The notes under the pieces were generated by a model, which saw only the letters and a program-made list of their open reading frames with translations, made no database searches and was not told the origin of the DNA. The translations under genes and the position numbers were made by a program. A DNA stretch of 64,000 nt from positions 124,001 through 188,000 of IMG/VR virus record IMGVR_UViG_3300036766_000194; one strand, given 5' to 3'. Shown piece after piece: positions 1,403 through 50,888 of this stretch (positions are counted from its first letter, which is position 1; the number at the start of each line of letters is the position of its first letter).

Positions 1403-1431
1403 TAACCTTTTTCAGAAAACTACAGTATTAT
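1403..1431 (+). promoter_or_regulatory. promoter of tRNA array 1 (TAACCT-N17-TATTAT); predicted +1 at the leader ATG
   Basis: matches a motif recurring about 10 times in the window; ATG lies 6 nt after the -10 box. Confidence 0.7.
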
Positions 1432-1437
1432 ATTAAC

Positions 1438-1521
1438 ATGAGACACATACTCTTATCATCGTATCTATCATCCAGTAGTTTGCTTACTGGATCCGAGCCG
1501 ATGAGAGGGTCTGTGGAATAA
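1438..1521 (+). CDS. attenuator leader peptide of tRNA array 1 (MRHILLSSYLSSSSLLTGSEPMRGSVE)
   Basis: codons 4-16 are all Ile(ATA)/Leu/Ser/Tyr codons read by the downstream tRNAs; overlaps the antiterminator strand. Confidence 0.8.
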   Translation: MRHILLSSYLSSSSLLTGSEPMRGSVE

Positions 1522-1545
1522 AGACAGACACTTAGAAGTAGAATC

Positions 1546-1584
1546 GGCCTCGGACCAAAGTACACGGTCCGAGGCTTTTGTTTT
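1546..1584 (+). terminator. intrinsic terminator (attenuator) before tRNA array 1
   Basis: 10-bp perfect stem GCCTCGGACC/GGTCCGAGGC followed by TTTTGTTTT; its 5' arm can instead pair with 1489-1502. Confidence 0.85.
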
Positions 1585-1597
1585 AGAAGTAAAGTTT

Positions 1598-1686
1598 GGA
1601 GCGGACGCCCTGTTGGAATGGGCACCTGTCTGTAAAACAGGAGTCCCCTGCGGATATTGTGGGTTCGAATCCCTCTCGCTCCACCA
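1598..1686 (+). tRNA. tRNA-Tyr(GTA)
   Basis: cloverleaf, CCTGT-CT GTA AA-ACAGG, long variable arm, CCA end. Confidence 0.92.
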
Positions 1687-1698
1687 AGTTTTATCTTT

Positions 1699-1784
1699 GC
1701 GCGAGTGGTGGAATGGCAGACACGCTGTCCTCAGAAGGCAGTCCTCGAAAGAGGGTGGAGGTTCAAATCCTCTCTTGCGCACCA
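1699..1784 (+). tRNA. tRNA-Leu(CAG)
   Basis: cloverleaf, long variable arm, A73, CCA. Confidence 0.93.
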
Positions 1785-1786
1785 AT

Positions 1787-1873
1787 GCCGAAGTGGCGGA
1801 ACTAGGCAGACGCGGCTGGCTCAAACCCAGTTGGTTAACAGCCATGGGGGTTCAAATCCCTCCTTCGGTACCA
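1787..1873 (+). tRNA. tRNA-Leu(CAA)
   Basis: cloverleaf, long variable arm, CCA. Confidence 0.93.
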
Positions 1874-1942
1874 AGTTTTTGGAGTTTACTGTGGTTTAGT
1901 TTAGAAAGGAGTAAACTAGGATAAACTCAGTAACTAGTTTGT

Positions 1943-2029
1943 GCGGGTATGGCGGAACTGGCAGACGCGTTGGACTTAAAATCCAATGGCCGCAAGGCCG
2001 TGGGGGATCGTGGCCCTCTACCCGTACCA
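1943..2029 (+). tRNA. tRNA-Leu(TAA)
   Basis: cloverleaf, atypical T-loop ATCGTGG, CCA. Confidence 0.88.
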
Positions 2030-2042
2030 AAGTTTTGATTTT

Positions 2043-2126
2043 CGGCGAGTGGCGTAATGGCAGCCGCGCTAGACTTAGAATCTAGTCCTTAAATGGGTGT
2101 GGGTTCGAATCCCTCCTCGCCGACCA
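2043..2126 (+). tRNA. tRNA-Leu(TAG)
   Basis: CTAGA-CT TAG AA-TCTAG, CCA. Confidence 0.92.
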
Positions 2127-2132
2127 AAATTT

Positions 2133-2218
2133 GCACCTGTGCCGGAACTGGCATACGGGCACGGCTGAGAACCGTGGAGCGAAAGCTCTTGTGAGTTCGA
2201 CTCTCACCAGGTGCACCA
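2133..2218 (+). tRNA. tRNA-Leu(GAG)
   Basis: CACGG-CT GAG AA-CCGTG, CCA. Confidence 0.93.
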
Positions 2219-2223
2219 ATATT

Positions 2224-2275
2224 CGCTAAGGATGGCGGAACTAGGCAGACGCATCCTTTAGGAACCCCAGTAGCG
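2224..2275 (+). pseudogene. tRNA-Leu D-arm remnant or tRNA-like hairpin
   Basis: 2233-2252 is identical to the D-arm region of Leu(CAA) at 1794-1813; no anticodon loop or T-arm. Confidence 0.5.
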
Positions 2276-2337
2276 AGTCCGGTTTTGATATGTGATATTA
2301 TATAGAGGAAGGGGTTTCTATATAAGATAACCTATAT

Positions 2338-2427
2338 GGGAAGTTGGCAGAGTGGCCTATTGTGCTGGTTTGCTAAACCAGAATGCTCGAAAGGGCATCA
2401 GAGGTTCGAATCCTCTACTTCCCGCCA
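2338..2427 (+). tRNA. tRNA-Ser(GCT)
   Basis: cloverleaf, long variable arm, G73, CCA. Confidence 0.93.
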
Positions 2428-2431
2428 ATTT

Positions 2432-2521
2432 GGACGGTTGACAGAGTGGCCTATTGTGCACGCCTGGAAAGCGTGATTACCCGAAAGGGTAACGAGTGTT
2501 CGAATCACTCACCGTCCGCCA
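2432..2521 (+). tRNA. tRNA-Ser(GGA)
   Basis: cloverleaf, long variable arm, G73, CCA. Confidence 0.93.
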
Positions 2522-2525
2522 GATT

Positions 2526-2675
2526 ATGAATCTAAAATGCAAGTGTGGTGAGGACAAATGGGAAGTTGTACAGAAAGCTGATGGTAAGAAGACTCTTACC
2601 TGCTTGTCTTGTGGTGCTGAGATTTTAATTTTCTTACTACTTCATCCTGAAAATAAGGATGTGAAGTGGGAGTAA
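2526..2675 (+). CDS. small Zn-ribbon protein (49 aa) inside tRNA array 1
   Basis: MNLKCKCGEDKW...TCLSCG; fills the tRNA spacer almost exactly. Confidence 0.55.
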   Translation: MNLKCKCGEDKWEVVQKADGKKTLTCLSCGAEILIFLLLHPENKDVKWE

Positions 2676-2682
2676 AGAGTTT

Positions 2683-2769
2683 GGAAGATGTGAGCGATGG
2701 CCGCTCGCTCGTCTCGAAAACGAGTCAAGCCGAAAGGCATAGGGTGTTCGATTCACCCATCTTCCGCCA
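2683..2769 (+). tRNA. tRNA-Ser(CGA)
   Basis: CTCGT-CT CGA AA-ACGAG, long variable arm, CCA; atypical D-arm. Confidence 0.88.
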
Positions 2770-2772
2770 AAT

Positions 2773-2855
2773 GGAAAGATCTGCCGACGGCAAAGGCAAT
2801 CTGTCTTGAAAACAGACGCACCGAAAGGTGCACGGTTCGACTCCGTATCTTTCCT
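2773..2855 (+). tRNA. tRNA-Ser(TGA), no encoded CCA
   Basis: TCTGT-CT TGA AA-ACAGA, long variable arm, acceptor stem GGAAAGA/TCTTTCC. Confidence 0.82.
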
Positions 2856-2873
2856 CATTAGTGAACTTTCTAT

Positions 2874-3194
2874 ATGGGTATAAAGTTCACAGTGTACAAA
2901 ACAACGAATCTTAAGAATGCCAAATTCTACCTTGGCTCTCATAAGACCGTTAATCCGAACGATAGCTATCTGGGTTCGGGTACACTTATCCTACGGGCGA
3001 TAGCCAAGTATGGAGAAGAGAACTTCAAAAAAGAAGTTCTCTTCGTATACGATAACGCTGAGAAAGCATTTAAGAAAGAATTTGAATTGGTAGAGGCTGA
3101 GAAGCAGGATAAACTCTGCTATAATTTAAGGCAGGGCGGCAGCGGTGGATTTGGGTCTTTGGTCGAAAGGACAATTTATTCTTATCTTGCGTGA
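2874..3194 (+). mobile_element. GIY-YIG (Seg-like) homing endonuclease, truncated
   Basis: VYKTTN..N.KFYLGSH, YLGSG and YNL..GG motifs; ends right after the catalytic domain; sits in a tRNA array. Confidence 0.8.
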
Positions 3195-3233
3195 AGATGG
3201 AAAACCTGATTTACAACTCGCTGAGTAGATTTC

Positions 3234-3322
3234 GCTGATGACCGTTGGTACGGGGAACCGCCTTATAAGCGGTCGCTCTAGATTAGAGCTTCTTTAGGGT
3301 TCGATTCCCTACGTCAGCACCA
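3234..3322 (+). tRNA. tRNA-Ile(TAT) with long variable arm
   Basis: acceptor GCTGATG/CGTCAGC-A-CCA, ACCGC-CT TAT AA-GCGGT, variable arm GCTCTA-gat-TAGAGC, T-loop TTCGATT. Confidence 0.85.
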
Positions 3323-3326
3323 ATTC

Positions 3327-3358: not shown

Positions 3359-3398
3359 CAGCCTCTTTTCGCTTTTTCAACCTCTTATAGAGGGATAA

Positions 3399-7923: not shown

Positions 7924-8319
7924 TTAATCCTTTAAGAAACCTTCCATCAATTTAGCATATTTTTCATTGTCTTTTGCTATGCGTTGAGTTTCTGCAAGTT
8001 CCAATAACCGGGGGAGATGGCTGGGGAAATTTTCCATCTTAAATTGTAGGATAGGATCGTATTTTGGGTTGGTTGTATCCACTACATCCAGGCGATCTGG
8101 GTGAAGGATCAAGTCTACAGCTTTGAAATCCAGGGGACTGAAACTCAAGGGGTTTACTTGTATGCGCTTAGGAAAAGCACAGATGTATGAAGAATTCTCA
8201 TCCGTATTCTCCGTTACCCACCAACTAAGCTCTCCTCTATCAGACTGTTGTATTAGATTGTTTAGGAACTTTTGGTCTAGTTCTTTTCGTTCCATTTCCT
8301 TGCGCTGAGGGTTTGACAT
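7924..8319 (-). CDS. hypothetical protein
   Basis: operon-like packing. Confidence 0.55.
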   Translation of the reverse strand: MSNPQRKEMERKELDQKFLNNLIQQSDRGELSWWVTENTDENSSYICAFPKRIQVNPLSFSPLDFKAVDLILHPDRLDVVDTTNPKYDPILQFKMENFPSHLPRLLELAETQRIAKDNEKYAKLMEGFLKD

Positions 8320-9439
8320 TTTTAGTTTTGTCCTGATTTATAATACTGGCTTTTTCTTGTTCCGTCTTTTTGCGTAGTCTAGCTTCACGACTACGACCAT
8401 CTTTAGCTGGCTCTAGAGTGAATACTGGAATGTCCAATGTTGGGTCCAGTTTAGCAATAGCCTTGGCGCTGAATTTATACTGTCTTCCGTAGGTATGAAT
8501 GACTTCGCGATAATTGGTGAGTTTAGGATTGATCTTTTTGAAGTAATTCCGCATCAAATTATCTTTGATGATACAATAGACGATAAATAGATTCTTAGGA
8601 GTTTTAATGTCTTTGCGCTTTATGGCATCGATAACCGTTTTAGCGATTTGTAATGGGCTGTTTACGCCATCATTTACCAAACGTTTTACCAAAGCCGTTA
8701 CGGTGCGCTGACGACTATAACGACGAGGTTCGTCAGAGTTACTAGCTTGTTGAATCTCGGGGAGAGATTTAGATAAAGATTCTTCCTCGGTTATCTTTAG
8801 ATCATCTGATATTAAAAATCTACCTTGAGGATCATCGTTAACAAGGTTAGAAACAACTGGTCCATGGTAGAACACTCTTTGATCTTCAGGAATGTGGTTA
8901 AGATTGAGAAGATTTCTAACTGGAGTTTCTACCAGAATGCTCTTTGTCTTTAGATTTATACGAACACAAGCAACACCATTCTGCATTACTTCTATTTTCC
9001 CGCAATAGTCCCGTGTTTCCCCATCTATAACTCTTACAAAGTCTCCAGCCCTAAGATTCTTAGCACGTTCATAAAAAATCTTCTGTATGTCCCTGATTAC
9101 CTCTTGAACATAGGAATCTTGTGCCATAATGGCTTTGCTGGGATGGTTGGTTTCTCCCTCTGTCACTAGTGCCACCACCCCCGTGATAGACTTGAGTCTG
9201 AGTAAGGGATGGATAGCATTGGTACGAATGAATATATAGATGCCAGTTTTAAGTTCAAAAACATCTAAGTCTCTTACACAAACCGGGATGAATACTTCTA
9301 CAGGTTCTGAACGAAAGATACTAGGAATAGCTTTTCCTATACGGCGTAGAGTCTGTTCGATCGTCTTCTCATTGCTTAACTCCATCATATACCAAGATTT
9401 ATTCTTGAGCTTCTCTATTGCGCCATATTGAAAAAGCAT
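8240..9439 (-). CDS. NusG-family protein (NGN + KOW) with a C-terminal extension of about 200 aa
   Basis: WY..., EVFIP, GIYIFI and ITGVVALV (NGN); LRAGDFVRVIDG...G.I (KOW). Confidence 0.8.
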   Translation of the reverse strand: MLFQYGAIEKLKNKSWYMMELSNEKTIEQTLRRIGKAIPSIFRSEPVEVFIPVCVRDLDVFELKTGIYIFIRTNAIHPLLRLKSITGVVALVTEGETNHPSKAIMAQDSYVQEVIRDIQKIFYERAKNLRAGDFVRVIDGETRDYCGKIEVMQNGVACVRINLKTKSILVETPVRNLLNLNHIPEDQRVFYHGPVVSNLVNDDPQGRFLISDDLKITEEESLSKSLPEIQQASNSDEPRRYSRQRTVTALVKRLVNDGVNSPLQIAKTVIDAIKRKDIKTPKNLFIVYCIIKDNLMRNYFKKINPKLTNYREVIHTYGRQYKFSAKAIAKLDPTLDIPVFTLEPAKDGRSREARLRKKTEQEKASIINQDKTKNVKPSAQGNGTKRTRPKVPKQSNTTV

Positions 9440-9539
9440 GTAGTACCTCTCTTCTGATTCAATACTACGTTCAGAGAATTTCGGAATATTAATAAATTAT
9501 TCAATAGCCTATCAGAAAATTCAGAGGTAGAATACTAAT

Positions 9540-12259: not shown

Positions 12260-12592
12260 ATAATATAAGTCCCCTTAAAATCCTTCACGTTTAATATCTT
12301 CAAAAATTTCTTCGTCGTCTTTGGAACGCATGAAACTCACAAGTACGATAGTAAGCAAAGTCCAAATGGTAAAAAATAGTCCCATGTCTCTATACTACCG
12401 TCCCCGCCGAATTAAGGTTAATACAGCGTGCCAATAATTCTTAACAGCCAAGACCAAACCTACTGCTACTGACATGAGCAAAGGCCAATTAGCGGGGGAG
12501 AATATCCCGTGAACAGGGCAGAAAAAGAATTCATAAATAGCGTTCATTTGTTTTCATCTTCTATGAACTTTGGAAACTTCACCAAAAATGCT

Positions 12593-14057: not shown

Positions 14058-14215
14058 ATAGGTTCTTCCAATTATATTCTACCGGAACGAATAGAAAAAG
14101 GTTAACCTTTCTTATGTTTCTCTCGATTGATACCAGTACATATCAGCGTATAATCCTCGCCTACAAGAGTGACAACGTTCTCCTGTCTTTCAAAAACGTT
14201 AATTTACGAAATTTC

Positions 14216-15791: not shown

Positions 15792-15897
15792 ATGTGTTCT
15801 CCTTAGATGTAAGCCCCTTAGATAAGGGTTCTCCTTTTATAGTCTACTGCTGATTCTATAAAAGGGGTAAATTTTATTACATTAGGTAAATAATACC

Positions 15898-16358: not shown

Positions 16359-17107
16359 CTTGTCTCCACTAACTCCACGAATGCGAAGAAAGGAGTTTTA
16401 GAAATTTTCTTGGCAATTTTCGTTTTCATGGAAGTTTGTGTAACTCCATGTTCAATATAGTCATGGATGATTTCTTCATCAGACAGACGTCGAACTAAAC
16501 GGAAGAAGGTTCGTTGCCGGATATCCTTTAGAAAGTTTACTGCGTAAATTAGCAGCTAGGTAGCGATTACCTGACACACGTTGTTGAATAGTTTTCATAA
16601 AGGTACTCTACCGGGGAGCAGTAGTAAAGAGTTAATTTACCAAGACAATGAACCTTTCATAATTACGGCAATTCAATCTCCCCGGTTCCCCGGCTTAGTA
16701 ATGAGAATGAACTCACTGTCACATTGCTGGTTGGCTTGGGATAGGGTTATCATTATTTGGCCTTTTCAAAAGCGATAGACGCACCCAAAAGGAAAGCATT
16801 TTCTATGATGAGATAATCCATAGGAGTGGGGTTAACGATGTTGTCTTCCACAAACACTCGAGACCGGGACTTTAGTTCGGACATCATTTCTTCCGTGATG
16901 TCAATGTAAGATTTCATGCCGGATTTACCTGATTCAGCAGTTTGCTGATCCTGTCTACAAAATTCATAAAGACAGCAAGCTGAAAATTAGGATCATCCAG
17001 AGCAGCCACGACAGCTTTTTCAACCATAGGATTGTGACGGAGAGTAATATGCTCCTTAGAATCACAATACAGACAAGGTCCATAAAGAAGTTCACTTTTT
17101 CCAATCA

Positions 17108-17698: not shown

Positions 17699-17840
17699 AT
17701 AACGTTCCTCCAGTCTACCGAACAGAATGAAAAAGGTTAATGATCCGGGTACAGACTTTCCGAGTACTCATACACTTCTCCAGATATAAGCGGCATTAAC
17801 AGCTAGAACGACGTATGTTTTCACTTCCATGGGGTATCTT

Positions 17841-18194: not shown

Positions 18195-18226
18195 GTGAAT
18201 ATTCTACCTTGTCTTTTTAGGATGAG

Positions 18227-18661
18227 TTATTCCAAACCAGAATTGCGTAGTATTCCTTGTATTACTGTCTCTCTGAGAAAATTATCCCAACGGGATATAG
18301 GTTGACGATAGCCCAACATAACGGCCCCAACATAGGATTTCATGGAAATCCTATTCCAAATATCTTCCCAAGTAGGACGGTGTATAGTTTTACCTATCAT
18401 CCTGAGTTTGGGCTCCGCCGAATTAAGGTCTCTTTGAGTATCTAGTTCCTCTGCATATTCTTCTATGGCTAGGTCAGCTAGACGACAAATACCTGGTAGA
18501 TCGGCCTTGTGAGGGATACGAAGGGCTATAATAGAATCAATAGAAACCTCTGCTAACAATGCTTGCTCCTGGGGACTGATACGCGGGGCATCATCCGTAG
18601 CAGGAAGCCCACAAGTAATACATAGTCCATTCTCATCTGCTAAGATATGTTCGCAGATCAT
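18227..18661 (-). CDS. hypothetical protein with N-terminal Zn ligands
   Basis: CEH...CITC; GAGGGG SD. Confidence 0.55.
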   Translation of the reverse strand: MICEHILADENGLCITCGLPATDDAPRISPQEQALLAEVSIDSIIALRIPHKADLPGICRLADLAIEEYAEELDTQRDLNSAEPKLRMIGKTIHRPTWEDIWNRISMKSYVGAVMLGYRQPISRWDNFLRETVIQGILRNSGLE

Positions 18662-22346: not shown

Positions 22347-22422
22347 TGGTAGGACCACAAGGATTCGAACCCTGGTATCGGAGGTAGAAGCTCCGCGCTC
22401 TGTCCGATTGAGCTATGGTCCC
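22347..22422 (-). tRNA. tRNA-Arg(TCT)
   Basis: CGGAG-CT TCT AC-CTCCG, CCA. Confidence 0.93.
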
Positions 22423-22426
22423 ACTT

Positions 22427-22502
22427 TGGAGGCCGGAGCGGGGTACGATCCCGCACACTTGGTTTAGGAAACCAGCGCACTGTCCATTTGTGCTATCCAG
22501 CC
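22427..22502 (-). tRNA. tRNA-Arg(CCT)
   Basis: anticodon loop TT CCT AA; T-loop ATCGTAC; CCA. Confidence 0.88.
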
Positions 22503-22507
22503 AAACT

Positions 22508-22582
22508 TGGTAGTCCCCACAGGACTCGAACCTGCAAAACGATGTTCGTAGCATCGTGTGATATCCATTTCACCAAGGGACC
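22508..22582 (-). tRNA. tRNA-Arg(ACG)
   Basis: CGATG-CT ACG AA-CATCG, CCA. Confidence 0.93.
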
Positions 22583-22585
22583 ACA

Positions 22586-22661
22586 TGGTATTCCCGGAGA
22601 GATTCGAACTCTCGTATCATCCTTCGGAGGAATGCGCCTGAGTCCACTAGGCTACGGGAAT
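22586..22661 (-). tRNA. tRNA-Arg(CCG)
   Basis: CATTC-CT CCG AA-GGATG, CCA. Confidence 0.93.
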
Positions 22662-22737
22662 AAACTCTATTAAACGCCGGATAGACTACAAAATTCTTCC
22701 GAAATCGTCTATCCGGTCACTATGACCGGGTATCTGG

Positions 22738-22812
22738 TGGATCCCAGAACTGGATTCGAACCAGTATGAATTCGTTCAGAGCGAATTAGGCTACCTATTG
22801 CCTCATCTGGGA
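22738..22812 (-). tRNA. tRNA-Gln(CTG)
   Basis: ATTCG-CT CTG AA-CGAAT, T1-A72, CCA. Confidence 0.9.
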
Positions 22813-22844
22813 ATTGAAACTCATGTCGTACAAGATGAAAAGCG

Positions 22845-22966
22845 GTAATGATAAGGTTCACCGCCGTCATCATTACGGAGAGCTTCTGTGACCTTTGGCA
22901 ATGCGCATTCACACTGGTCATGCTCTTCCTGCGGACACCCGCCGTTTAAACGAACCATATCATTAC
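22845..22966 (-). ncRNA. candidate structured RNA in a tRNA spacer
   Basis: 14/15-bp closing helix plus three nested helices. Confidence 0.5.
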
Positions 22967-22979
22967 TCCTTTCTAAAAT

Positions 22980-23054
22980 TGGCTCTCCGAGTAGGACTTG
23001 AACCTACAACCTTTCGGTTAACAGCCGACTGCTCCGCCATTGAGCTACCGGAGA
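22980..23054 (-). tRNA. tRNA-Asn(GTT)
   Basis: canonical Asn body, CCA. Confidence 0.93.
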
Positions 23055-23060
23055 ATTGAT

Positions 23061-23090
23061 AGGAGATGATAGTCGCGACTATCATCTCCT
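23061..23090. repeat. perfect 30-bp palindrome
   Basis: AGGAGATGATAGTCG-CGACTATCATCTCCT. Confidence 0.9.
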
Positions 23091-23097
23091 TCTTAAC

Positions 23098-23174
23098 TAG
23101 TCGGCCAATTCTTGAATTTTGGCATTTCCAGCTCTGCCAATGGCGGCTGGCGTCTTTCCGTTAAACGACGACTA
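23098..23174 (-). ncRNA. candidate tRNA-like four-way-junction RNA
   Basis: TAGTCG/CGACTA closes three hairpins; the first loop has GG, the last contains TTCAAG. Confidence 0.45.
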
Positions 23175-23176
23175 AA

Positions 23177-23252
23177 TGGCTGGGGCGGGAGGACTCGAAC
23201 CTCCAAGTACCTGAGTAACAGTCAGGCGCTGTACCGATTGAGCCACACCCCA
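23177..23252 (-). tRNA. tRNA-Asn(GTT), second divergent copy
   Basis: CCTGA-CT GTT AC-TCAGG, T1-A72, G73, CCA. Confidence 0.9.
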
Positions 23253-23270
23253 ATTGAACTTCTACAACTC

Positions 23271-23346
23271 TGGTGGAGCAGATGGGATTTGAACCCACAT
23301 CCTTCGCATTGCAAGTGCGCTGCGCCGCCAATTGCGCCACTGCCCC
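23271..23346 (-). tRNA. tRNA-Ala(TGC)
   Basis: G3:U70, anticodon TGC, CCA. Confidence 0.94.
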
Positions 23347-23355
23347 AAAGTTAAG

Positions 23356-23429
23356 TGGTAGGGCTAGGGAGAATCGAACTCCCGTCTACTGATTAAGAGT
23401 CAGCAGCTTTACCATTAAGCTATAGCCCT
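23356..23429 (-). tRNA. tRNA-Lys(CTT)
   Basis: GCTGA-CT CTT AA-TCAGT, CCA. Confidence 0.93.
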
Positions 23430-23439
23430 AAAATTGCCC

Positions 23440-23572
23440 ATATTTTTATCCCACGTCGGCTTTACGTTACCTTACGATAACGAGCGTGTGATGCCTTAGA
23501 CTTACGTCCGTAACAGGCGGCATCCACCCGGCTTATTTGCGTGAACGGAGGCAAGCTACCCCCGTCACGCTT
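23440..23572 (-). ncRNA. candidate structured RNA with GNRA-capped hairpins
   Basis: three stems, two GTAA tetraloops on the minus strand. Confidence 0.5.
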
Positions 23573-23579
23573 CATAAAA

Positions 23580-23655
23580 TGGTATCCCCGGCAGGATTTG
23601 AACCTGCGTATCTGGTTTCGTAGACCAGTACCTGAGTCCACTAGGCTACGGGGAC
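23580..23655 (-). tRNA. tRNA-Arg(ACG), second copy
   Basis: CTGGT-CT ACG AA-ACCAG, CCA. Confidence 0.93.
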
Positions 23656-23666
23656 AAAGTAACTTC

Positions 23667-23742
23667 TGGTGGGTCCGGAGGGTTATGATCCCCCATAACG
23701 CTGTTTAAAAGACAGCTGCTTTGCCAGTTAAGCTACGAACCC
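23667..23742 (-). tRNA. tRNA-Lys(TTT)
   Basis: GCTGT-CT TTT AA-ACAGC; T-loop ATCATAA; CCA. Confidence 0.9.
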
Positions 23743-23752
23743 ATTTAAAACT

Positions 23753-23829
23753 TGGGGTGTAGGACGGGTCTCGAACCCGCTTTAACCGGATTCACAGTCC
23801 GGCGCGTCACCTGTTTCGCCTCCTACACC
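23753..23829 (-). tRNA. tRNA-His(GTG)
   Basis: encoded G-1:C73, CCGGA-CT GTG AA-TCCGG, CCA. Confidence 0.92.
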
Positions 23830-23831
23830 AT

Positions 23832-23993
23832 CGTTTAGTGCTTCCTTGTAAAAGGCAGTTTCAGTCCATTTCTTTTTCAAATGGGCATGAACAGCCATAT
23901 CAGTTACTCCTAGTTTCCTAGCACACGGTCCACCATTGTTGTTTTCTCATGAACCCTTCAATGCCCTTTGTAAGAGATACTGAAAGTCACGAA
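23832..23993 (-). ncRNA. candidate rod-shaped RNA between tRNA-Trp and tRNA-His
   Basis: nested long-range helices TTTCAGT/ACTGAAA and CAAAGGGCAT/ATGCCCATTTG. Confidence 0.45.
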
Positions 23994-23995
23994 TG

Positions 23996-24067
23996 CAGGA
24001 TGGGAGGGACTCGAACCCCCGTAAACGGTTTTGGAGACCGTTGTCCTGGCCGCTGAACGACCATCCT
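23996..24067 (-). tRNA. tRNA-Trp(CCA), no encoded CCA end
   Basis: ACGGT-CT CCA AA-ACCGT, A1-U72, G73. Confidence 0.9.
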
Positions 24068-24269: not shown

Positions 24270-24298
24270 AGAATACGGGATATCTTTCAAAAAGGTTA
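24270..24298 (-). promoter_or_regulatory. promoter of tRNA array 2 (TAACCT-N17-TATTCT)
   Basis: same motif and spacing as the array-1 promoter. Confidence 0.7.
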
Positions 24299-26988: not shown

Positions 26989-27038
26989 GGTGTTCCTCCA
27001 GTTATATTCTACCGAGTAGGACGAAAAAAGGTTAATCG

Positions 27039-28351: not shown

Positions 28352-29245
28352 CTATTCTACTGGAATAGAAGGAGAAAAGCTATATTCAAAATAGGATTTA
28401 AGGGAAGCATCTTTCCACGACATTCTATGAGGACTTCTGCTGGTAGGAGCAAACTCTTCCTTAACGGCGTCTATATACATGGAAAAGGTAAAATCGTCCC
28501 CCATGTAAAACTTGTCCCAACCTTTTTGAGTAAAGAATCTCTTAATTTTCAATTGTTCAATAGCGAGGTTATCAAAGGATAGAACACATTTTCCAAAATA
28601 CTTGGCAATGTACATCTTCCATCGGTTAATTTCTTTTTCAATACCCTCATTGTAGAACGCCAACCCCCGTCCGTAATGCTTATAACCTAGGACGAGAATT
28701 TTAGCCTTTGAATCATATGCCAGTAGGTCGTTTATGACCTCAACTTTGTCTTTACCAGCGATAACATGGTAGACGATATTTTCTGTAAGGGATTTAACCC
28801 GACCAAGACAAGAAAGACTCTTAGAATTTAAAACCGAGATTCCCAAACCTTTGATGTATCCTTTTGAAATCAGGGACACCAGGTCGGTTTCGTATCTCTT
28901 AACATGACCTTGATTGACTGTCAGGTTTGCGATAAACCCCAGTTCTGTTAGACGTTTCAGAAATTCAGCCAGAGAAGGATGGGATAGAGGATTTCCTCCT
29001 CCTATAGCGAGTTCCGTCCCAACAGAAAGACCCTTTAACGTATCCAGTAAATGTCCCAAATCCGCATGAGTTCCCGCCGTAGTGGACATCTCATGACAGT
29101 AAGCGCACCCAAGATCACAATAGTTTGTGATCTTGATGTCTATGGACTCCGGAAATACAGGCATGGGAGTACCTTCATACTCCCGTGTCTTAGTTCCATC
29201 GTCCAGGATGGTGACTATTGTATTTCCGTTTTGGTATCTGATCAT
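28352..29245 (-). CDS. radical SAM protein
   Basis: CDLGCAYC (CxxxCxxC), GGGNP. Confidence 0.9.
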   Translation of the reverse strand: MIRYQNGNTIVTILDDGTKTREYEGTPMPVFPESIDIKITNYCDLGCAYCHEMSTTAGTHADLGHLLDTLKGLSVGTELAIGGGNPLSHPSLAEFLKRLTELGFIANLTVNQGHVKRYETDLVSLISKGYIKGLGISVLNSKSLSCLGRVKSLTENIVYHVIAGKDKVEVINDLLAYDSKAKILVLGYKHYGRGLAFYNEGIEKEINRWKMYIAKYFGKCVLSFDNLAIEQLKIKRFFTQKGWDKFYMGDDFTFSMYIDAVKEEFAPTSRSPHRMSWKDASLKSYFEYSFSPSIPVE

Positions 29246-30094: not shown

Positions 30095-30126
30095 TTAGTT
30101 ACTCTACTGTTACTTTCTGAAAAAGG

Positions 30127-31464
30127 CTAGGGAAAGTTTATCTCAGTTTTCATCCTAGCTACGTCCGGTATACTGTGTACCACTTCTTCCTGAATTTCAT
30201 TTCCAGCCTCTATTAGCCCATAACTTCCATTAGTTCTATCCAATTCCAAAACGGTTGCTATGTTGTCAACGAGCGTATGGATACCCTCGTTCATAAGTCG
30301 TAACCATTGACTATAAAAGTAGGAGATAGCTTGCTCCTGCTTAGTCTTACGAATCTCCTTCATTATAGTACGTTTAAAATTGGGAATATCAAACCCCCGA
30401 ATCAAAGCCGCACCAGCATCCCATAGGGTACAATTAGGATTTATGTCAAAGGTGAAGAGATCAAACCTGTAGATCTTAGTTCCCTTTTTGGTGTCATGAG
30501 TGATAATTTCCTGAAAAGTTACACGAGCGGTGTTAATGACCATCTTGTCGTTCGCGTGTTCAAGATTCACCAGATCCGAAGGGTTAGCAACCGTAATAGG
30601 AGAACCCCCTGGATATAGAGTGGCTGTGGCTGTAGGAGAAAAAGCCATCTGAAGCCCTGTGCCCGGATCTTGAACAGAAAAATATTTCTCTACAATCTTA
30701 GCCACCGAAGGATCCTCTATGATAGCAAGTTCCCCTCCGGTGAAGGTGCGAATTTCCTCCGCACGTTTACCAATCTCCTCAACATACAAGGCACCAGAGG
30801 TTTTGTTATTGAGAAATTTCGTAACCCAATCGGCGTCGCCAAACTGCCACATGAGAGGGTAGGTTTCTACTCCCAGGTTCTTAATGAGATTAAGAACTGC
30901 TAAGATATTATCTTGATTAGAATTTTGGATATAGACGCGACCTGTGTGAAAATCCAGCAGCACTGGGAATTGGGTGCGGAGTTGCTCAGCCCATCCCTGA
31001 GCCATGGAATCAACGGTTTTCTTATCGTCTTTCCCGGTATACTTATAAGGACGGGACATCTTTGTGTAGGAAAGGTGTTCCCTAATGGAGTTCAAATCGC
31101 TGACATCTTCCTGAGTATTTAGGACAAACCAGAAACCATACCAGGGCATGTCAGGATTGATGCGATAGGAAACTTCACTATCGCCATAATAATCACGGTA
31201 ATCTTCAGTTACAACATTCTCATTCTTTAGAGAAGTATAGAGTTCTTCGTAGTGAGGAGTTATTCCTAGCTCCCGACCTTCATCTTTTCGCGGGTCGTTG
31301 AAAGGATTTATACCCACAGTATCCACGTTACCAAACTTGGCGCGGGTGTAGGCGACAAGTTGAGAAGAATCAAACAAGGCCGGAGTCTTTATTATACTGA
31401 CCCTAAAAGCATCCAGCGATTCAGGATTTAGTCCTACAATAGCCCATTGCGCTTTACCAAACAT
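30127..31464 (-). CDS. hypothetical protein (445 aa)
   Basis: long ORF, AGGAG SD. Confidence 0.7.
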   Translation of the reverse strand: MFGKAQWAIVGLNPESLDAFRVSIIKTPALFDSSQLVAYTRAKFGNVDTVGINPFNDPRKDEGRELGITPHYEELYTSLKNENVVTEDYRDYYGDSEVSYRINPDMPWYGFWFVLNTQEDVSDLNSIREHLSYTKMSRPYKYTGKDDKKTVDSMAQGWAEQLRTQFPVLLDFHTGRVYIQNSNQDNILAVLNLIKNLGVETYPLMWQFGDADWVTKFLNNKTSGALYVEEIGKRAEEIRTFTGGELAIIEDPSVAKIVEKYFSVQDPGTGLQMAFSPTATATLYPGGSPITVANPSDLVNLEHANDKMVINTARVTFQEIITHDTKKGTKIYRFDLFTFDINPNCTLWDAGAALIRGFDIPNFKRTIMKEIRKTKQEQAISYFYSQWLRLMNEGIHTLVDNIATVLELDRTNGSYGLIEAGNEIQEEVVHSIPDVARMKTEINFP

Positions 31465-33116: not shown

Positions 33117-33226
33117 TTTGTTCTCCTGTTAATTACTCTACCGTCACCGCCAGAAAAAGGCTAATTTTATCTCAGTTTTCATCCTATACGCACTGATCTT
33201 ATCTAACTCTTCCCATTTTCCTCCTG

Positions 33227-48200: not shown

Positions 48201-48802
48201 AGGACTTGAACATCTTCAAAATAAGGATAACCGCGTAGCTTCGCGCCAATACAAAGACGCATTATCTCACGGTCAAACTTAGCATTATAAAAAACCAAGT
48301 GACAAACATCAAACAGGGGTTGGAGAGCTTCCAGTACGTCCGCACGACTAACATTTTGAGAAGGATTTCCTTCTTTATCGGCATGCTCATGGGCGATAGG
48401 AATATAGACTCCTTCAATACCATTAGACGATAAACAGATACCAGCAATATCAATCATCACTTCGTAAAGGGGTTGACCGTCAACACCCATCTTGTAAAAA
48501 CTACGGGTATCAAGTCCTAGGGTTTCTGTGTCTAACGCCACCACGGGCATAAGCATTCCGTTTATGGTAAAATGCCGTGTGGTATCGGATATAACTTCTT
48601 GAACCCAATCAAGAAGAGTTTCTTTCGTATTGATGATACGGAAGGCTTTCTCTGCCATCCAAGGCTTTTTTAATTTTTGTATCTCTAGAGTTTTTAAATG
48701 AAAACGAAATACACTTCGGATGTCTTTAGGAGCCTTAATTTTAACAGGTTTTTTGACAACCAGGTCTTCTGGGTTTACATTCTCACGTTTTATCTTAGCC
48801 AT
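45203..48802 (-). CDS. family A DNA polymerase with 3'-5' exonuclease
   Basis: DTET, YNAKFD, YAASD; motif A DYSNIEMR, motif B RSLAKIINFALLYG, motif C VHDEI. Confidence 0.95.
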   Translation of the reverse strand: MAKIKRENVNPEDLVVKKPVKIKAPKDIRSVFRFHLKTLEIQKLKKPWMAEKAFRIINTKETLLDWVQEVISDTTRHFTINGMLMPVVALDTETLGLDTRSFYKMGVDGQPLYEVMIDIAGICLSSNGIEGVYIPIAHEHADKEGNPSQNVSRADVLEALQPLFDVCHLVFYNAKFDREIMRLCIGAKLRGYPYFEDVQVLHYIVDPKADVADKKRGQYSGDTGGLKALSKKLLGMEMIDLDELIKIKADWCPTLQSGDCKCTSEERKINKHTQRVQYVPFTWLPLEVTLWYAASDAICTWLLWKHLRERAAQQKFVHRIDQELVDSLSWIERQRFLIDIQKRNRTVNWHETIIKKIENQLRDISVKNGWKVEKDEDNNPIEDTIFNPGSPAQVGKLLFNTLGLKVTKKTAGGGNSVDAEALSDLQKLYPDNEFLNLYGKYKEYVALHPENLTYDKRDNSARIFLKQTTVAGGRLSGAGGDFIVDGGFGLNPQGIVRVEGNWWVKGNVLEPDSIPEEEIEEHAEADLHPSCFKEIEEDITETVTRTYETDEGSIFNSREEKVVTGKRKIRKVAPNIIKNHIGFYQGYAICLVPSCKTCDRKFNTIWKNGRADAAEVVNIRALFSTEPGWTFFTIDYSNIEMRAAANVSGEPEFIKEFLEGAGDFHSLTASKVFPEFNDPNTPKAIKKALRSLAKIINFALLYGGTEYTIYENMKKQNPDITWEEAKLMVEKYWAGVPVFAEWCTMKQAIAKDKMICKTSTGRIINFKSAMEVLHIHEPLKIELENYWEWRKSCKKEEALKNSESPEDKAEYERLKEHNNRVWRNVDTGVRNVQDYNRFQGKIGRVAVNVPLQGLAGDYMRLSLNRIRIWACDQEPEVQSILRVHCSVHDEIDFAVKNEYVPFVLPRISRLMKLRKLHERMNWVVPIECDVEYGRNWDVEHHVTGDDGHKPAAWTAIEGMERYIPSEFTQDTVKSLIKAIESGVEERREKAKNWLKESLHERAFLSIKEVFDAKDHKSLVNSLVAVLQLHEFWTIDNVPDDDKLGTLEDYETRNGLSPKDRGIMPPSGYLGPIPPSRAVYPNIMRLGKEEIIQGELFAPPSTVTPVEDVLLDNPIRRPKKISVSTPILPIPKIDTGLPELIDLTPDIVVKLTAAVGFGKGTNIIKVRYKDKIMTLEKTVVTEIPNEFLKSKISLIEAMHG

Positions 48803-49406
48803 GGAATCCCTTGCGTATGGCGAGCTTACTAACCACTTCTTTCCCTAATACTGACGCAAGAGGGATCGCAGCTTTGTCGTGTTCGGACTCAAAATATAAA
48901 CGAAGATATTCCATAGCAAGTTCGGGGTCTTTTGTTGTAATAATATCCTGAGTGGCTTTTTGTAAGAAGGGTTCACGAAGATCTTCAAAGGAAAGAGAAA
49001 CAGTGTCATCTTCTTTTTCAGATAAGACGTCTTCTATAGGTGGGAGTTCAAATTTATGTTCCAGCCAAATGAGAGCCTTGACGCGTGAAAAATTGAAGAG
49101 TTTGGAAGTAAAACGGACGGCGTCGTAATATTGTTGACGCGGTGGACAACCGAAACACCAGCAATCATTTGTACGGCGATAAACATAGAAAGACGGACGG
49201 CTATCCCGACCGTGAAAAGGACAACTGATAGCTTGAGTGTTCTTTTTGGTAAGTTCAAAAACGACATCCTCTATACGAATATCATTACGCACACGTTCCC
49301 AACGAATAGGATTTACCCCCGCTGCTTCTCCACTGTAATAGAGCTTGGCATAAGCGGAACGGGAGAACTCTATATCCTCCGGGTCGGGATAGAGCATGTC
49401 ATCCAT
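48795..49406 (-). CDS. primase CHC2 zinc-binding domain protein (stand-alone)
   Basis: CPFHGRDSRPSF...CFGC...D. Confidence 0.85.
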   Translation of the reverse strand: MDDMLYPDPEDIEFSRSAYAKLYYSGEAAGVNPIRWERVRNDIRIEDVVFELTKKNTQAISCPFHGRDSRPSFYVYRRTNDCWCFGCPPRQQYYDAVRFTSKLFNFSRVKALIWLEHKFELPPIEDVLSEKEDDTVSLSFEDLREPFLQKATQDIITTKDPELAMEYLRLYFESEHDKAAIPLASVLGKEVVSKLAIRKGFHG

Positions 49407-49423
49407 TCTGACCTCTCTTTCTT

Positions 49424-50734
49424 CTAGAAATACTCATTTTGAGACGTGTTTCCGGTGAATGACTTCTCTACCTTTTCCCTCGTCTTATAGGGTTTACGTT
49501 GCTTCTGTATAGGTCCGCCATCTATGAAAGACTCTCTCAACTGAATAAGACGTTTCTTATTACGGGTAAAAGTGGCTTCATCCACACCCAGCATTTCTTT
49601 AGCTTCCCGGATGGTTCCGGTTTCACTGATAGCGTTCAGAGTACTGATGAGTTCTGGTTGATTCTCCCACACATAGTCATAGAAACGCTTTACCAGTAGA
49701 TGTTTTTCCATGTTTGTGCACTGGTCTTCACTCTTCTTTTCCAATACTCGGGAGTGGGAATGAATGTACTCATCATCAGCAATATACACATCCTCGTCTG
49801 AAGAGTTACCCATACCAAAGATAACATTGTCCTTACGATAAACAGGGTTCTTATTCTGTTTACCAATAATGGTGACAGAACGATTGTATAAACAAATGTT
49901 AAGATAATTACGAAATCTCCGTTCACTAGCCCCATACTGACGATAGGGATCAAAACACTGAATTACATCCGTACAACCATCTGGATGATGACTACTAGGC
50001 TTACGTGCCTTAGAATTTTCTGGAAGATAGTGTAGGTATAGAAGAAGTTCCTGTTCCCAGTCACGAACAGCTTCGTTGTCTTCAGGCAATTTCAGCCACT
50101 TGGATGTCCAACGACGAATATACCGGGGTTCTTTTGCATAAAATTCAGCAAAATTCTTAGGAACAAGGTATCCGTCATCATAGGAAAAATAGCGACCTTT
50201 AGTGGTGACGTTGAACCTATCTCCAGTGTAAGGATTGACTTCAATATATCTGGTTATGGTTTCGTCAAAGGAATAAACCCCATCTACAACTTCTCCTGTC
50301 AAAGCTCCTACAATGGGAAAATCCCAATCCAAGGGTCTACCTTCTAGGGTTACAACACCCGGACGCCAAAGATATACCGTTGCTCCCTTATAAACCAAGT
50401 GAGCATGACGGCTGTTCTTTCTGGAAACAATTTCTTCCTTTATAAGGACAACATACTTGGGTACATTACGACCTGCCCAGTCTTTTTGGTTATTGACGAC
50501 GGGGATGCGATTTCCAGCGTTCCAAGAGTTTCTAGAAATCTTCTTTCCCGGATATACGTCTTGTTCCAGGACATATTCTTCCTCCTTATCAGTAGGAATA
50601 TAAGCCAACACAACTTGTCCTACTTCCTCTACTTGTCCTCCAAGAGAGATACGCAAGTTATGTTTGTTGGGCTTGAGTTTATAAACTTCTTTTGATCCAG
50701 GAAAGATAACGCAACCAGCACTCGGTGAAAGCAT
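49424..50734 (-). CDS. sigma-factor-like protein with an N-terminal extension
   Basis: DWEQELLL...FDP...F..YL....N (region 2-like); C-terminal HTH TIREAKEMLGVDEATF..NKKR (region 4-like). Confidence 0.55.
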   Translation of the reverse strand: MLSPSAGCVIFPGSKEVYKLKPNKHNLRISLGGQVEEVGQVVLAYIPTDKEEEYVLEQDVYPGKKISRNSWNAGNRIPVVNNQKDWAGRNVPKYVVLIKEEIVSRKNSRHAHLVYKGATVYLWRPGVVTLEGRPLDWDFPIVGALTGEVVDGVYSFDETITRYIEVNPYTGDRFNVTTKGRYFSYDDGYLVPKNFAEFYAKEPRYIRRWTSKWLKLPEDNEAVRDWEQELLLYLHYLPENSKARKPSSHHPDGCTDVIQCFDPYRQYGASERRFRNYLNICLYNRSVTIIGKQNKNPVYRKDNVIFGMGNSSDEDVYIADDEYIHSHSRVLEKKSEDQCTNMEKHLLVKRFYDYVWENQPELISTLNAISETGTIREAKEMLGVDEATFTRNKKRLIQLRESFIDGGPIQKQRKPYKTREKVEKSFTGNTSQNEYF

Positions 50735-50888
50735 ACGCCCCCATAAACCATCATAGTGACTGCTGCTGTATACGCCTAATACGGCATAACAACAAAATGC
50801 TTTAATTGTGACAGGAATAAGGAACTAAAGTACCTGTCAAGTCAAAACAGTACTCTACGCCTATTTTTTGAAGAAAGCTAGTAAAATT

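What the first reader, a model, noticed from the sequence alone, without database searches (positions are those of the whole stretch)
1403..50880. Recurring phage promoter TA(A/G)CCT-N17-TA(G/T)xxT, often leaderless
Seen at about 1403(+), 9505(+), 12420(-), 14104(-), 17739(-, 16-nt spacer), 24298(-), 27034(-), 30129(-) and 33163(-). Variants occur near 112(+), 15869(-), 18229(-) and 50880(-). A G precedes the -10 box in each case, and the -35 box is often followed by a T-run. At 1438, 9540, 12385, 18194 and 30094 the ATG is exactly 6 nt after the -10 box. The -10 is sigma70-like but the -35 is not TTGACA, implying a phage sigma or activator, or an unusual host sigma.
Basis: partly seen in the sequence, partly recalled or inferred. 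Interest (0 to 1): 0.6.

Follow-up and report, generated by a model that had tools for sequence, protein, structure and literature searches.

The report
Jumbo-phage early promoter, often leaderless
A two-box promoter motif recurs about 44 times in this 300-kb uncultivated jumbo phage, placed so that its messages would begin exactly at the start codon or at the ribosome-binding site; relatives that infect Acidobacteria have the same layout with their own upstream boxes, so it is a real and unusual phage promoter class, though not an unprecedented kind.

Summary
TARCCT-N17-TAKNNT occurs 10 times in the window against 0.7 expected. A position matrix finds 44 sites in the whole 299,875-bp phage genome where shuffles give 0.6. 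The consensus is tTA(A/G)C(C/T)TTTTT, about 12 nt, then (A/G)GTAGAATA. In 15 sites an ATG lies exactly 6 nt after the hexamer (about 0.8 expected). In 11 more, GGAGGAAC starts at that same position.

The sites precede rIIA/rIIB, helicases, ligase, Pnk and RNA ligase, three tRNA arrays, many small ORFs and the sigma-primase-DNA polymerase operon. They do not precede structural genes. This is the phage's pre-replicative promoter class.

Tunturiibacter phage Tunturi_5 and nine metagenomic relatives have the same geometry, each with a different upstream box. The ORF at 49424-50734 folds like a sigma70-family factor and is syntenic with Tunturi_5 gp3.

Which factor reads the motif is not settled. 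The -10 half looks like host rRNA promoters, and some relatives carry canonical extended -10 or near-TTGACA boxes. I therefore favour host primary sigma, possibly assisted (about 0.55), over the phage sigma (about 0.3). No RNA data exist to map transcription starts.

The parts
112..140 (+). Class A promoter variant (TACCCG box, TAGAAT). It lies upstream of ORF 169-555. An identical copy lies at genome position 40402.
   Evidence: score 22.7
1403..1431 (+). Class A promoter (TAACCT...TATTAT). The ATG at 1438 opens only 27 codons. The promoter heads the tRNA array 1598-3322.
9505..9533 (+). Class A promoter with a leaderless ATG at 9540 (54 aa).
12392..12420 (-). Class A promoter with a leaderless ATG at 12385 (36 aa).
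14076..14104 (-). Class A promoter. GGAAGAAC begins at the predicted +1. The gene is 13797-14057.
15841..15869 (-). Class A variant (TACCCC...TAGACT) upstream of the OmpA-domain ORF 14544-15791. A copy of it travels with an inserted cassette in strain variant L002.
16605..16634 (-). Class A site with an 18-nt spacer and a leaderless ATG at 16598 (39 aa).
17712..17739 (-). Class A site with a 16-nt spacer. GGAGGAAC follows the hexamer directly. The gene is 17108-17698.
18201..18229 (-). Class A promoter with a leaderless ATG at 18194 (117 aa).
24270..24298 (-). Class A promoter (TAACCT...TATTCT) heading the tRNA array 24067-22347.
27006..27034 (-). Class A promoter. GGAGGAAC begins at the predicted +1. 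The gene is 26686-26988.
28354..28382 (-). Class A promoter inside the 3' end of the upstream gene. The ATG at 28346 starts the nucleotidyltransferase gene 27369-28346.
30101..30129 (-). Class A promoter with a leaderless ATG at 30094 (86 aa).
33135..33163 (-). Class A promoter with AGGAGAAC two nt after the predicted +1. The gene is 32952-33116.
50852..50880 (-). Class A variant (TAGCTT...TAGAGT) about 111 nt upstream of the sigma-like gene. It heads the sigma-primase-DNA polymerase operon.
50776..50782 (-). GTATTAG, a member of a second, -10-only motif class (class B). It lies 48 nt upstream of the sigma ATG.
49424..50734 (-). 436-aa sigma70-family-like protein: an N-terminal beta domain (1-160) plus sigma2-like (about 185-300) and sigma4-like (about 340-408) domains. 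It is the candidate phage sigma.
1598..3322 (+). Array of 11 tRNA genes downstream of the 1403 promoter.
22347..24067 (-). Array of 13 tRNA genes downstream of the 24298 promoter.

Best explanation
What it is. The motif is the main pre-replicative (early-type) promoter of an uncultivated 300-kb jumbo phage related to Tunturiibacter phage Tunturi_5. These phages carry no RNA polymerase of their own.

Layout. It is a bipartite sigma70-type promoter.

Predicted transcripts (inferred). Transcription should start 7 nt after the hexamer. The RNAs would then begin with AUG (leaderless, 15 of 44 sites) or with the Shine-Dalgarno sequence GGAGGAAC (11 of 44). Three sites head tRNA arrays.

Most likely reader (inferred). 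Host core RNA polymerase with the host primary sigma is the most likely reader. It would use the host-like G-TAnnnT -10 half. The phage-private upstream box would be tolerated by sigma region 4 or read by an accessory factor, giving the phage strong promoters of its own.

Role of the sigma-like protein (inferred). The divergent sigma-like protein encoded at 49424-50734 is itself expressed from such a promoter. It more probably serves a later class of promoters.

Shown versus inferred. Shown here: the motif, its statistics, its position, the conservation of its layout in relatives, and the sigma-like fold. Inferred: the transcription start, the timing and the identity of the sigma.

Confidence. 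That this is a genuine promoter class: about 0.9. The figure given for this explanation as a whole is the second.
For: Statistics.
- 44 sites against 0.6 in shuffles.
- ATG exactly 6 nt after the hexamer in 15 sites, against about 0.8 expected from the ATG frequency.
- GGAG(G/A) exactly at that position in 11 more. No ATG at 4 or 5 nt.

Genes downstream. They are rIIA/rIIB, helicases, ligase, Ku, Pnk, RNA ligase, the CCA-adding enzyme, NAMPT, tRNA arrays and sigma-primase-polymerase. None is structural.

Portability. A strain variant carries an inserted cassette made of a copy of one of these promoters plus a superinfection-immunity gene.

Relatives. The same geometry, G-TAnnnT plus 5-6 nt plus ATG or GGAGG, is found in Tunturi_5 and in G001-G005 and G072-G074.

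Host side.
- 32 rRNA promoters of Acidobacteriota are TTGACA-N17-TAnnnT, about a third of them with G at -13, for example G-TAGTTT and G-TATGTT.
- In relatives G004 and G072 the class is a canonical extended -10, TGGTATA(C/A)T. In G003, G005 and G074 the box is TGGACA, TATACA or TTGtnCA.

Bootstrapping.
- No phage RNA polymerase is annotated in Tunturi_5.
- Canonical TTGACA promoters show no excess in any of these phages, so one of the phage's own classes must be read by unmodified host enzyme.
- The sigma gene lies behind class A in G000, G001 and G005.

Leaderless genes. They are common in Acidobacteria: 13% on average in 3 of 3 genomes (PMC3160421).
Against: - The upstream box is not TTGACA. 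In the best register it matches 4 of 6 positions with an 18-bp spacer, and the critical G is replaced by A in 96% of sites.
- The box carries about 9 bits, and in Tunturi_5 it extends over about 17 conserved bases. That is more than sigma region 4 needs.
- The box differs from phage to phage, although the hosts' primary sigma should be nearly the same.
- The Tunturi_5 two-block motif is at chance level in 201 genomes of the host order: 3 matches against 3 in the control.
- The recognition helix of the phage sigma's sigma4 domain varies along with the box.
- No transcription start has been mapped; no RNA run holds this phage.
- The host of this particular phage is not known.
Confidence: 0.55

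Rival explanations
1. The phage's own sigma-like protein (49424-50734, the gp3 family) replaces the host sigma and reads both boxes. Each phage of the family would then have a private promoter code that co-evolves with its sigma. The first molecules of sigma would come from a host-read promoter (class B or an extended -10 in front of the gene) or would arrive with the virion.
For: - The protein has sigma2- and sigma4-like domains only. This architecture normally needs both a -35 and a -10 box, and class A is the only bipartite class found.
- The -35 box is phage-specific, while host rRNA promoters are strictly TTGACA.
- The variable residues of the sigma4 recognition helix differ wherever the box differs. 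They agree where the box agrees: G001 and G002 (FNRARNR; TA(C/G)CCG), and G004 and G073 (FNRFR; AAT(T/C)CC box about 21-23 nt upstream).
- The gene is conserved next to the terminase gene in 28 of 36 related viral loci.
- In four of seven phages the sigma gene has a promoter that is not class A.
- The motif has high information content, as in alternative-sigma regulons.
Against: - The genes served are early-type and include the sigma gene itself.
- The agreeing pairs are close relatives, so the covariation is not independent evidence.
- Class A in G004 and G072 carries the TGn extended -10. That element is read by region 3.0 of primary sigmas, which a two-domain sigma lacks (established knowledge of sigma70).
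- The conserved part of the protein is sigma2, whereas the -10 hexamer of class A varies between phages.
- No known phage that lacks its own polymerase uses its own sigma for its earliest genes (own knowledge).
Confidence: 0.3
2. Sigma appropriation, as at T4 middle promoters. Host primary sigma reads the -10 half, while a phage-encoded activator bound to the upstream box (centred near -30) replaces the -35 contact. Class A would then be a delayed-early or middle class.
For: - The box spans about -36 to -26 and ends 12-13 bp before the hexamer. That is the geometry of a MotA box (own knowledge of T4).
- The box is longer than a -35 hexamer, about 17 conserved bases in Tunturi_5.
- The family encodes a very conserved 243-aa protein with a sigma4-like HTH domain.
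Against: - No MotA or AsiA homologue was detected.
- The conserved 243-aa factor cannot explain a box that differs in every phage.
- No other class looks early, so nothing would make the activator first.
- The activator itself is hypothetical.
Confidence: 0.1
3. The motif is not a promoter. It would be a repeated element of another kind, such as an operator, a recombination or homing site, or the remnant of a duplicated cassette.
For: - Some copies are parts of duplicated segments: genome positions 40402 and 124112 are identical, and one copy moves with an inserted cassette.
Against: - The spacers are unrelated in sequence between sites.
- Sites lie upstream of, and in the same orientation as, the next gene.
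- Distances to the ATG or Shine-Dalgarno sequence are fixed to the base.
- Relatives keep the layout while changing the sequence.
Confidence: 0.03

Closest known systems
Early promoters of phage T4, read by host sigma70 (own knowledge)
   Same: - Many near-identical strong promoters lie in front of pre-replicative genes, including rIIA/rIIB and tRNA genes.
- The -10 box is sigma70-like.
- Conservation is phage-specific and extends beyond the host consensus into the -35 region and upstream of it.
- The phage has no polymerase of its own.
   Different: - The T4 box (GTTTAC) is one mismatch from TTGACA; here the best register gives 4 of 6.
- T4 messages have ordinary leaders. Here a third of the sites are leaderless and a quarter start at the Shine-Dalgarno sequence.
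Middle promoters of Bacillus phage SPO1 read by the phage sigma gp28, and promoters read by phiEco32 gp36 (own knowledge; PMC12276001, PMC8948821 found)
   Same: - A phage-encoded sigma70-family protein redirects host core enzyme to a private promoter consensus.
- The best Foldseek match of the 436-aa model is the sigma chain of the phiEco32 complex (9m7y_F).
   Different: - Those sigmas serve middle or late genes, and their genes are transcribed from host-type early promoters.
- Here the motif serves early-type genes and the sigma gene itself.
- No Pfam or NCBIfam sigma model matches the protein.
T4 middle promoters (MotA box plus sigma70 -10, with AsiA)
   Same: - A sigma70-like -10 box is combined with a non-canonical box centred near -30 that ends 12-13 bp before it.
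   Different: - No MotA or AsiA homologue is present.
- The box sequence is unrelated.
- The timing is unknown.
Leaderless-gene promoters of Deinococcus, Actinobacteria and Acidobacteria (TAnnnT about 12 nt before the start codon; PMC3160421, PMC4007540)
   Same: - The first T of the hexamer lies 12 nt before the ATG, so the start codon is the predicted first base of the RNA.
   Different: - Here this is a phage-wide, high-information bipartite motif.
- A second, equally precise variant places the Shine-Dalgarno sequence at the 5' end.

Membership tests
sigma70-type bipartite promoter | -10 hexamer of the form TAnnnT | tested here: met
   T 98%, A 96% and final T 98% in the 44 sites.
sigma70-type bipartite promoter | Second conserved element 16-18 bp upstream of the hexamer | tested here: met
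   The spacer is 17 bp in nearly all sites, with single cases of 16 and 18.
sigma70-type bipartite promoter | -35 element resembling TTGACA | tested here: not met
   The box is TA(A/G)C(C/T)T. The best register, tTA(A/G)CC with an 18-bp spacer, matches 4 of 6 positions and has A where G is expected. Host-order rRNA promoters do have TTGACA.
sigma70-type bipartite promoter | Lies upstream of, and in the same orientation as, a gene or RNA gene | tested here: met
   34 of 44 sites are intergenic. Most of the rest lie in the last bases of the preceding gene. All good sites face a start codon or a tRNA array.
sigma70-type bipartite promoter | Transcription starts about 7 nt after the hexamer | not testable with these tools
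   No RNA run holds this phage.
Extended -10 promoter (TGnTAnnnT) | T at -15 and G at -14 | tested here: not met
   In this phage the G is at -13, with A or G at -14 and C at -15. The feature is met in relatives G004 and G072.
Leaderless mRNA arrangement | Start codon at the predicted first transcribed base | tested here: met
   15 of 44 sites have ATG exactly 6 nt after the hexamer and one has it at 7 nt. About 0.8 would be expected by chance.
T4-type middle promoter (MotA/AsiA) | MotA and AsiA proteins encoded by the phage | tested here: not met
   PF09114 and PF09010 give no match in the whole genome at E up to 1.
sigma70 family (protein 49424-50734) | Sigma2 and sigma4 folds in the right order | tested here: met
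   The model has pLDDT 86. Most of the top 30 VIA matches are sigma factors: SigB Z 7.8 over residues 182-406, sigma4 domains Z 6-7.6 over 340-408, and SigI6 sigma2 Z 6.9 over 185-302. These Z values are moderate.
sigma70 family (protein 49424-50734) | Match to curated sigma70 sequence models | tested here: not met
   No Pfam, NCBIfam or PDB sequence hit. PF04542 has no match anywhere in the genome.
sigma70 family (protein 49424-50734) | Binds core RNA polymerase and directs initiation | not testable with these tools
   Needs biochemistry.

The most novel reading that the evidence does not exclude
The divergent sigma-like protein is the reader of this motif. It belongs to a sigma70 subfamily that no curated model detects, is encoded next to the terminase gene throughout a large family of Acidobacteria-associated jumbo phages, and has chromosomal homologues in Acidobacteriota. 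Each phage would then carry a private, co-evolving -35 code, and its earliest genes would be transcribed by host core enzyme carrying a phage sigma. That sigma would be made from a host-read promoter in front of its gene or delivered with the virion. Many of the resulting messages would be leaderless or would start at the Shine-Dalgarno sequence.
Probability: 0.3. Interest if true: 0.75.

Novelty: new variant of a known kind. Interest (0 to 1): 0.55.

Why it matters
- Almost nothing is known about how phages of Acidobacteriota, a dominant soil phylum, control transcription. Here a whole family of 300-kb phages shows a readable programme: one bipartite class and two -10-only classes.
- Start sites can be predicted to the base. 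The messages fall into two unusual types: leaderless, and with the Shine-Dalgarno sequence at the 5' end.
- The family encodes a sigma-like protein family that curated models miss.
- Because Tunturi_5 and its host are in culture, every inference made here can be tested directly.
- The promoters would also be useful parts for genetic tools in Acidobacteriota.

Tried and rejected
- Near-identical phage records: none found.
- The window motif as such in Tunturi_5: no more matches than the control. This led to de novo analysis of that genome instead.
- Matrix scan of the 20-kb flanks of sigma homologues in 37 viral loci: almost empty. It is uninformative, because in the window's own genome that region holds only one or two sites.
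- GTAGTAT and TAGAGGG as second motifs: no clear pattern at first look.
- Canonical TTGACA/TATAAT promoters: no excess in any of the phage genomes tested. Loose matches are fewer than in shuffles, and exact TTGACA-N17-TAnnnT is at chance level.
- A second sigma like Tunturi_5 gp211 (a true ECF-type sigma by Pfam): no homologue in this genome.
- Sigma70 r2, r4 and r4_2 models on the whole genome: only sub-threshold HTH hits.
- RNA evidence: only four DNA runs from sediment metagenomes hold the phage.
- N-terminal domain of the sigma-like protein in the ESM Atlas: no usable hit.
- The 243-aa conserved HTH protein: the model has low confidence (pLDDT 63) and only weak sigma4-like matches (Z about 5), so it stays undecided.
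- The Tunturi_5 two-block motif in 201 genomes of the host order: chance level.
- An automatic consensus for the fragmentary relatives G002, G071 and G075 gave too few sites to use.


Full report
WHERE THE WINDOW LIES. The window is bases 124001-188000 of a single 299,875-bp IMG/VR virus record with direct terminal repeats. The first 40 bases recur 127 bases from the end. G+C is 43%. The record has no near-identical phage in GenBank. Its DNA polymerase is 43.6% identical, over 97% of its length, to that of Tunturiibacter phage Tunturi_5. Tunturi_5 is a 309-kb myovirus of an Acidobacteriota host (PMC11924767). Gene order around the terminase gene is shared between the two phages: terminase, small ORF, sigma-like gene, primase, DNA polymerase, ORF, portal. 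The only runs that hold the phage are DNA runs from sediment metagenomes.

THE OBSERVATION. A two-block matrix built from the sites and iterated on the whole genome finds 44 sites, at a threshold where block shuffles give 0.6. The consensus is a-t-TA(A/G)C(C/T)TTTTT, then about 12 unconserved bases, then c(A/G)GTAGAATA. The -10 block carries about 12 bits and the upstream block about 9 bits. GTAGAATA is the most enriched 8-mer upstream of genes, 26 against 1.8 expected. Two further sites, 28382- and 16634-, were missed. Three matches look like chance: 1320-1348 on the - strand, 63333-63361 on the + strand, and the matrix hit at 42578+ inside a gene.

GEOMETRY. In 15 of the 44 sites an ATG lies exactly 6 nt after the hexamer, and one more has it at 7 nt. 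From the ATG frequency, about 0.8 would be expected. None has an ATG at 4 or 5 nt. In 11 other sites GGAGGAAC, or a one-base variant of it, begins at exactly that position. If transcription starts 7 nt after the hexamer, as at sigma70-type promoters, the RNAs begin either with AUG or with the Shine-Dalgarno sequence. This is an inference; no start has been mapped.

WHAT THE SITES SERVE.
- Downstream genes include rIIA and rIIB, two helicases, a ligase, a Ku-like protein, polynucleotide kinase and RNA ligase.
- They also include the CCA-adding enzyme, a nucleotidyltransferase, an Fe-S oxidoreductase and NAMPT.
- Many ORFs of 36-120 codons are served as well.
- Three tRNA arrays are served, two of them in the window.
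- The sigma-primase-polymerase operon is served too.
- The structural block at window 37-63 kb holds none apart from the site in front of the sigma gene.

This gene set is typical of a pre-replicative class.

PORTABILITY. A strain variant (L002, 99.8% identical) has a 1.2-kb insertion just upstream of the terminase gene. The insertion begins with a 178-bp copy of the 15869 promoter region and encodes a superinfection-immunity domain protein. This is what a portable promoter cassette would look like.

RELATIVES. The motif as such is absent from Tunturi_5. De novo analysis of the whole Tunturi_5 genome shows two strong classes of its own.
- About 35 sites read AAAGTCATCTTTGG, about 13 nt, then TTTGTAGGTTGA. 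In 10 of them ATG lies exactly 6 nt after TAGGTT. These sites sit in front of small unknown genes.
- About 45 sites read AATAATC, about 20 nt, then tgGGTATTAg. These sit in front of replication and nucleotide-metabolism genes, tRNAs and both annotated sigma genes.

Metagenomic relatives, fetched through the sigma homologue, show the first layout again. Each has its own upstream box:

| Genome | Upstream box | -10 region |
|---|---|---|
| G001, G002 | TA(C/G)CCG | ccGTAG(T/A)AT |
| G003 | T(G/A)G(A/C)CA | ccGTATACTA |
| G005 | cTATACA | ggGTATAATa |
| G074 | gTTGtnCA | gGTATACT |
| G004, G073 | A-rich AAT(T/C)CC box, about 21-23 nt upstream | GTATACT (CGTGGTATACTG in G004) |
| G072 | no box | tgGTATAAT |

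In all of them the hexamer is followed, after 5-6 nt, by ATG or GGAGG. The layout is therefore conserved while the sequence is not, which is strong evidence of function.

OTHER MOTIF CLASSES. A second motif, (A/G)GTATTA(T/G/A) without a -35 box, is conserved in sequence in all these genomes. That includes the window's genome, which has about 15 sites, one of them 48 nt before the sigma ATG. A third motif, T(T/A)TAG(A/G)(A/G), is four-fold enriched between genes in Tunturi_5, G003 and G004, and lies in front of structural genes. I read these as later classes, but did not pursue them further.

THE SIGMA-LIKE PROTEIN.
- The 436-aa product of 49424-50734 has no Pfam, NCBIfam or PDB sequence match.
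- It is 32% identical to Tunturi_5 gp3, which is annotated as a sigma factor, and has 86 homologues.
- An AlphaFold model built on 39 of them has pLDDT 86.
- Foldseek's best match is the sigma chain of the phiEco32 open complex (E 0.036; PMC12276001).
- In the alignment against 48,161 chains, most of the top 30 matches are sigma70-family factors. Full-length group 3 and group 4 sigmas span residues 180-408 (Z 6-7.8), sigma4 domains cover 340-408, and sigma2 domains cover 185-300. The Z values are moderate, but the consistency is convincing.
- Residues 1-160 form a beta-rich domain of unknown kind that some relatives lack.
- The gene follows the terminase gene in 28 of 36 related viral loci.
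- Homologues of the sigma part also lie in 24 Acidobacteriota MAGs, on contigs of up to 1.8 Mb. They have no phage genes within 10 kb. In many loci they sit next to a conserved divergent upstream gene, which in the one locus scanned is HU-like and surrounded by ordinary chromosomal genes. This ties the family to that phylum.

WHO READS THE MOTIF? Neither Tunturi_5 (by its annotation) nor this genome (as far as I looked) encodes an RNA polymerase, MotA or AsiA.

Evidence for host primary sigma:
- In 32 genomes of an Acidobacteriota order, the rRNA promoters are TTGACA-N17-TAnnnT. About a third have G at -13, with hexamers such as TAGTTT, TAGCTT and TATGTT. The -10 half of the phage motif is therefore host-like.
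- In G004 and G072 the class carries the canonical TGn extended -10. In G003, G005 and G074 the box is close to TTGACA.
- None of the phage genomes tested has an excess of canonical promoters, so one of the phage's own classes must be read by unmodified host enzyme. Class A is the most sigma70-like of them.
- The genes served are early-type, and in three of seven phages they include the sigma gene itself.
- T4 early promoters are a precedent for phage-specific conservation at promoters read by host sigma (own knowledge).

Evidence for the phage sigma:
- The box is private to each phage and carries much information.
- The box is not used in 201 genomes of the host order.
- The protein is a two-domain sigma, a type that needs both boxes.
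- The variable residues of its sigma4 recognition helix change whenever the box changes, and agree in the two pairs that share a box. Those pairs are close relatives, so this is not independent evidence.
- The far more conserved 243-aa HTH protein of the family would fit the conserved motifs better.

Weighing these, I put host primary sigma, alone or assisted, at about 0.55. The phage sigma gets about 0.3, a MotA-like appropriation about 0.1, and 'not a promoter' a few per cent.

COMPARISON AND NOVELTY. Functionally the closest things known are T4 early promoters, the private promoters of phage sigmas (SPO1 gp28, phiEco32 gp36), and the leaderless-gene promoters of Deinococcus, Actinobacteria and Acidobacteria (PMC3160421). 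Three things are new here:
- The phage family itself: jumbo phages associated with Acidobacteriota, for which the Tunturi paper mentions no promoters.
- The base-exact pairing of one promoter with two message types.
- A sigma-like family that curated models do not detect.

I rate it a new variant of a known kind.

Noticed in passing
genome 189958-190689 (- strand), outside the window (L052:9958-10689): A 243-aa HTH protein is conserved at 55-87% identity across the whole phage family. Its Tunturi_5 counterpart, gp346, is annotated 'exonuclease'. It gives weak matches to sigma70-ECF, sigma4 and antiterminator Q models. It is a candidate reader of the conserved GTATTA or TTAGAG motifs.
   Followed up: partly
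window about 54541-54561; L002:2670-3857: A 99.8%-identical strain variant carries a 1.2-kb insertion just upstream of the terminase gene. The insertion starts with a 178-bp copy of the 15869 promoter region and encodes a superinfection-immunity (Imm) domain protein.
   Followed up: yes
window 112-180 and genome 40402-40470: An identical promoter plus 5' gene segment is present twice in the genome. The sites at genome positions 33222 and 91726 also share their spacer and leader. This suggests that promoter cassettes get duplicated.
   Followed up: no
window about 50945-51045 (- strand), inside ORF 50889-51314: A 33-nt unit containing AGTATTAA is repeated in tandem about 2.3 times, just upstream of the promoters of the sigma gene.
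   Followed up: no
window 51426-54422 (- strand): The terminase large subunit gene (998 aa) contains a LAGLIDADG domain, probably an intein or inserted homing endonuclease. The RNA ligase ORF at genome 95321-97660 also carries a LAGLIDADG segment.
   Followed up: no
L090-L113 (Acidobacteriota MAG contigs): Homologues of the sigma-like domain lie in 24 Acidobacteriota genomes on contigs of up to 1.8 Mb, without phage genes nearby. Many have a conserved divergent upstream gene. In the one locus scanned (L091) that gene is HU-like, and cytochrome oxidase and other chromosomal genes surround it.
   Followed up: partly
window 18900-20240, 14216-14458 and 50776-50782; genome-wide: There is a second motif class, (A/G)GTATTA(A/G/T), with no -35 box and about 15 sites. 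It is conserved in sequence in Tunturi_5 (about 45 sites, in front of replication genes) and in all relatives.
   Followed up: partly
window 3386-3392 and 63113-63119; genome 218470, 235925, 239827, 264088: A third motif, T(T/A)TAGAGG, lies 13-16 nt before start codons of large, probably structural genes. It is four-fold enriched between genes in Tunturi_5, G003 and G004. It may be a late promoter that overlaps the ribosome-binding site.
   Followed up: partly
window 8240-9439 (- strand): This ORF is 41% identical to Tunturi_5 gp25, annotated 'transcription antiterminator'. It has no Pfam support.
   Followed up: no
window 1598-3322 and 22347-24067: There are 24 tRNA genes in two arrays within the window. 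A third promoter of the same tRNA-type subclass, sharing the TCGCTAATTAAC upstream bases, lies at genome 233063.
   Followed up: partly
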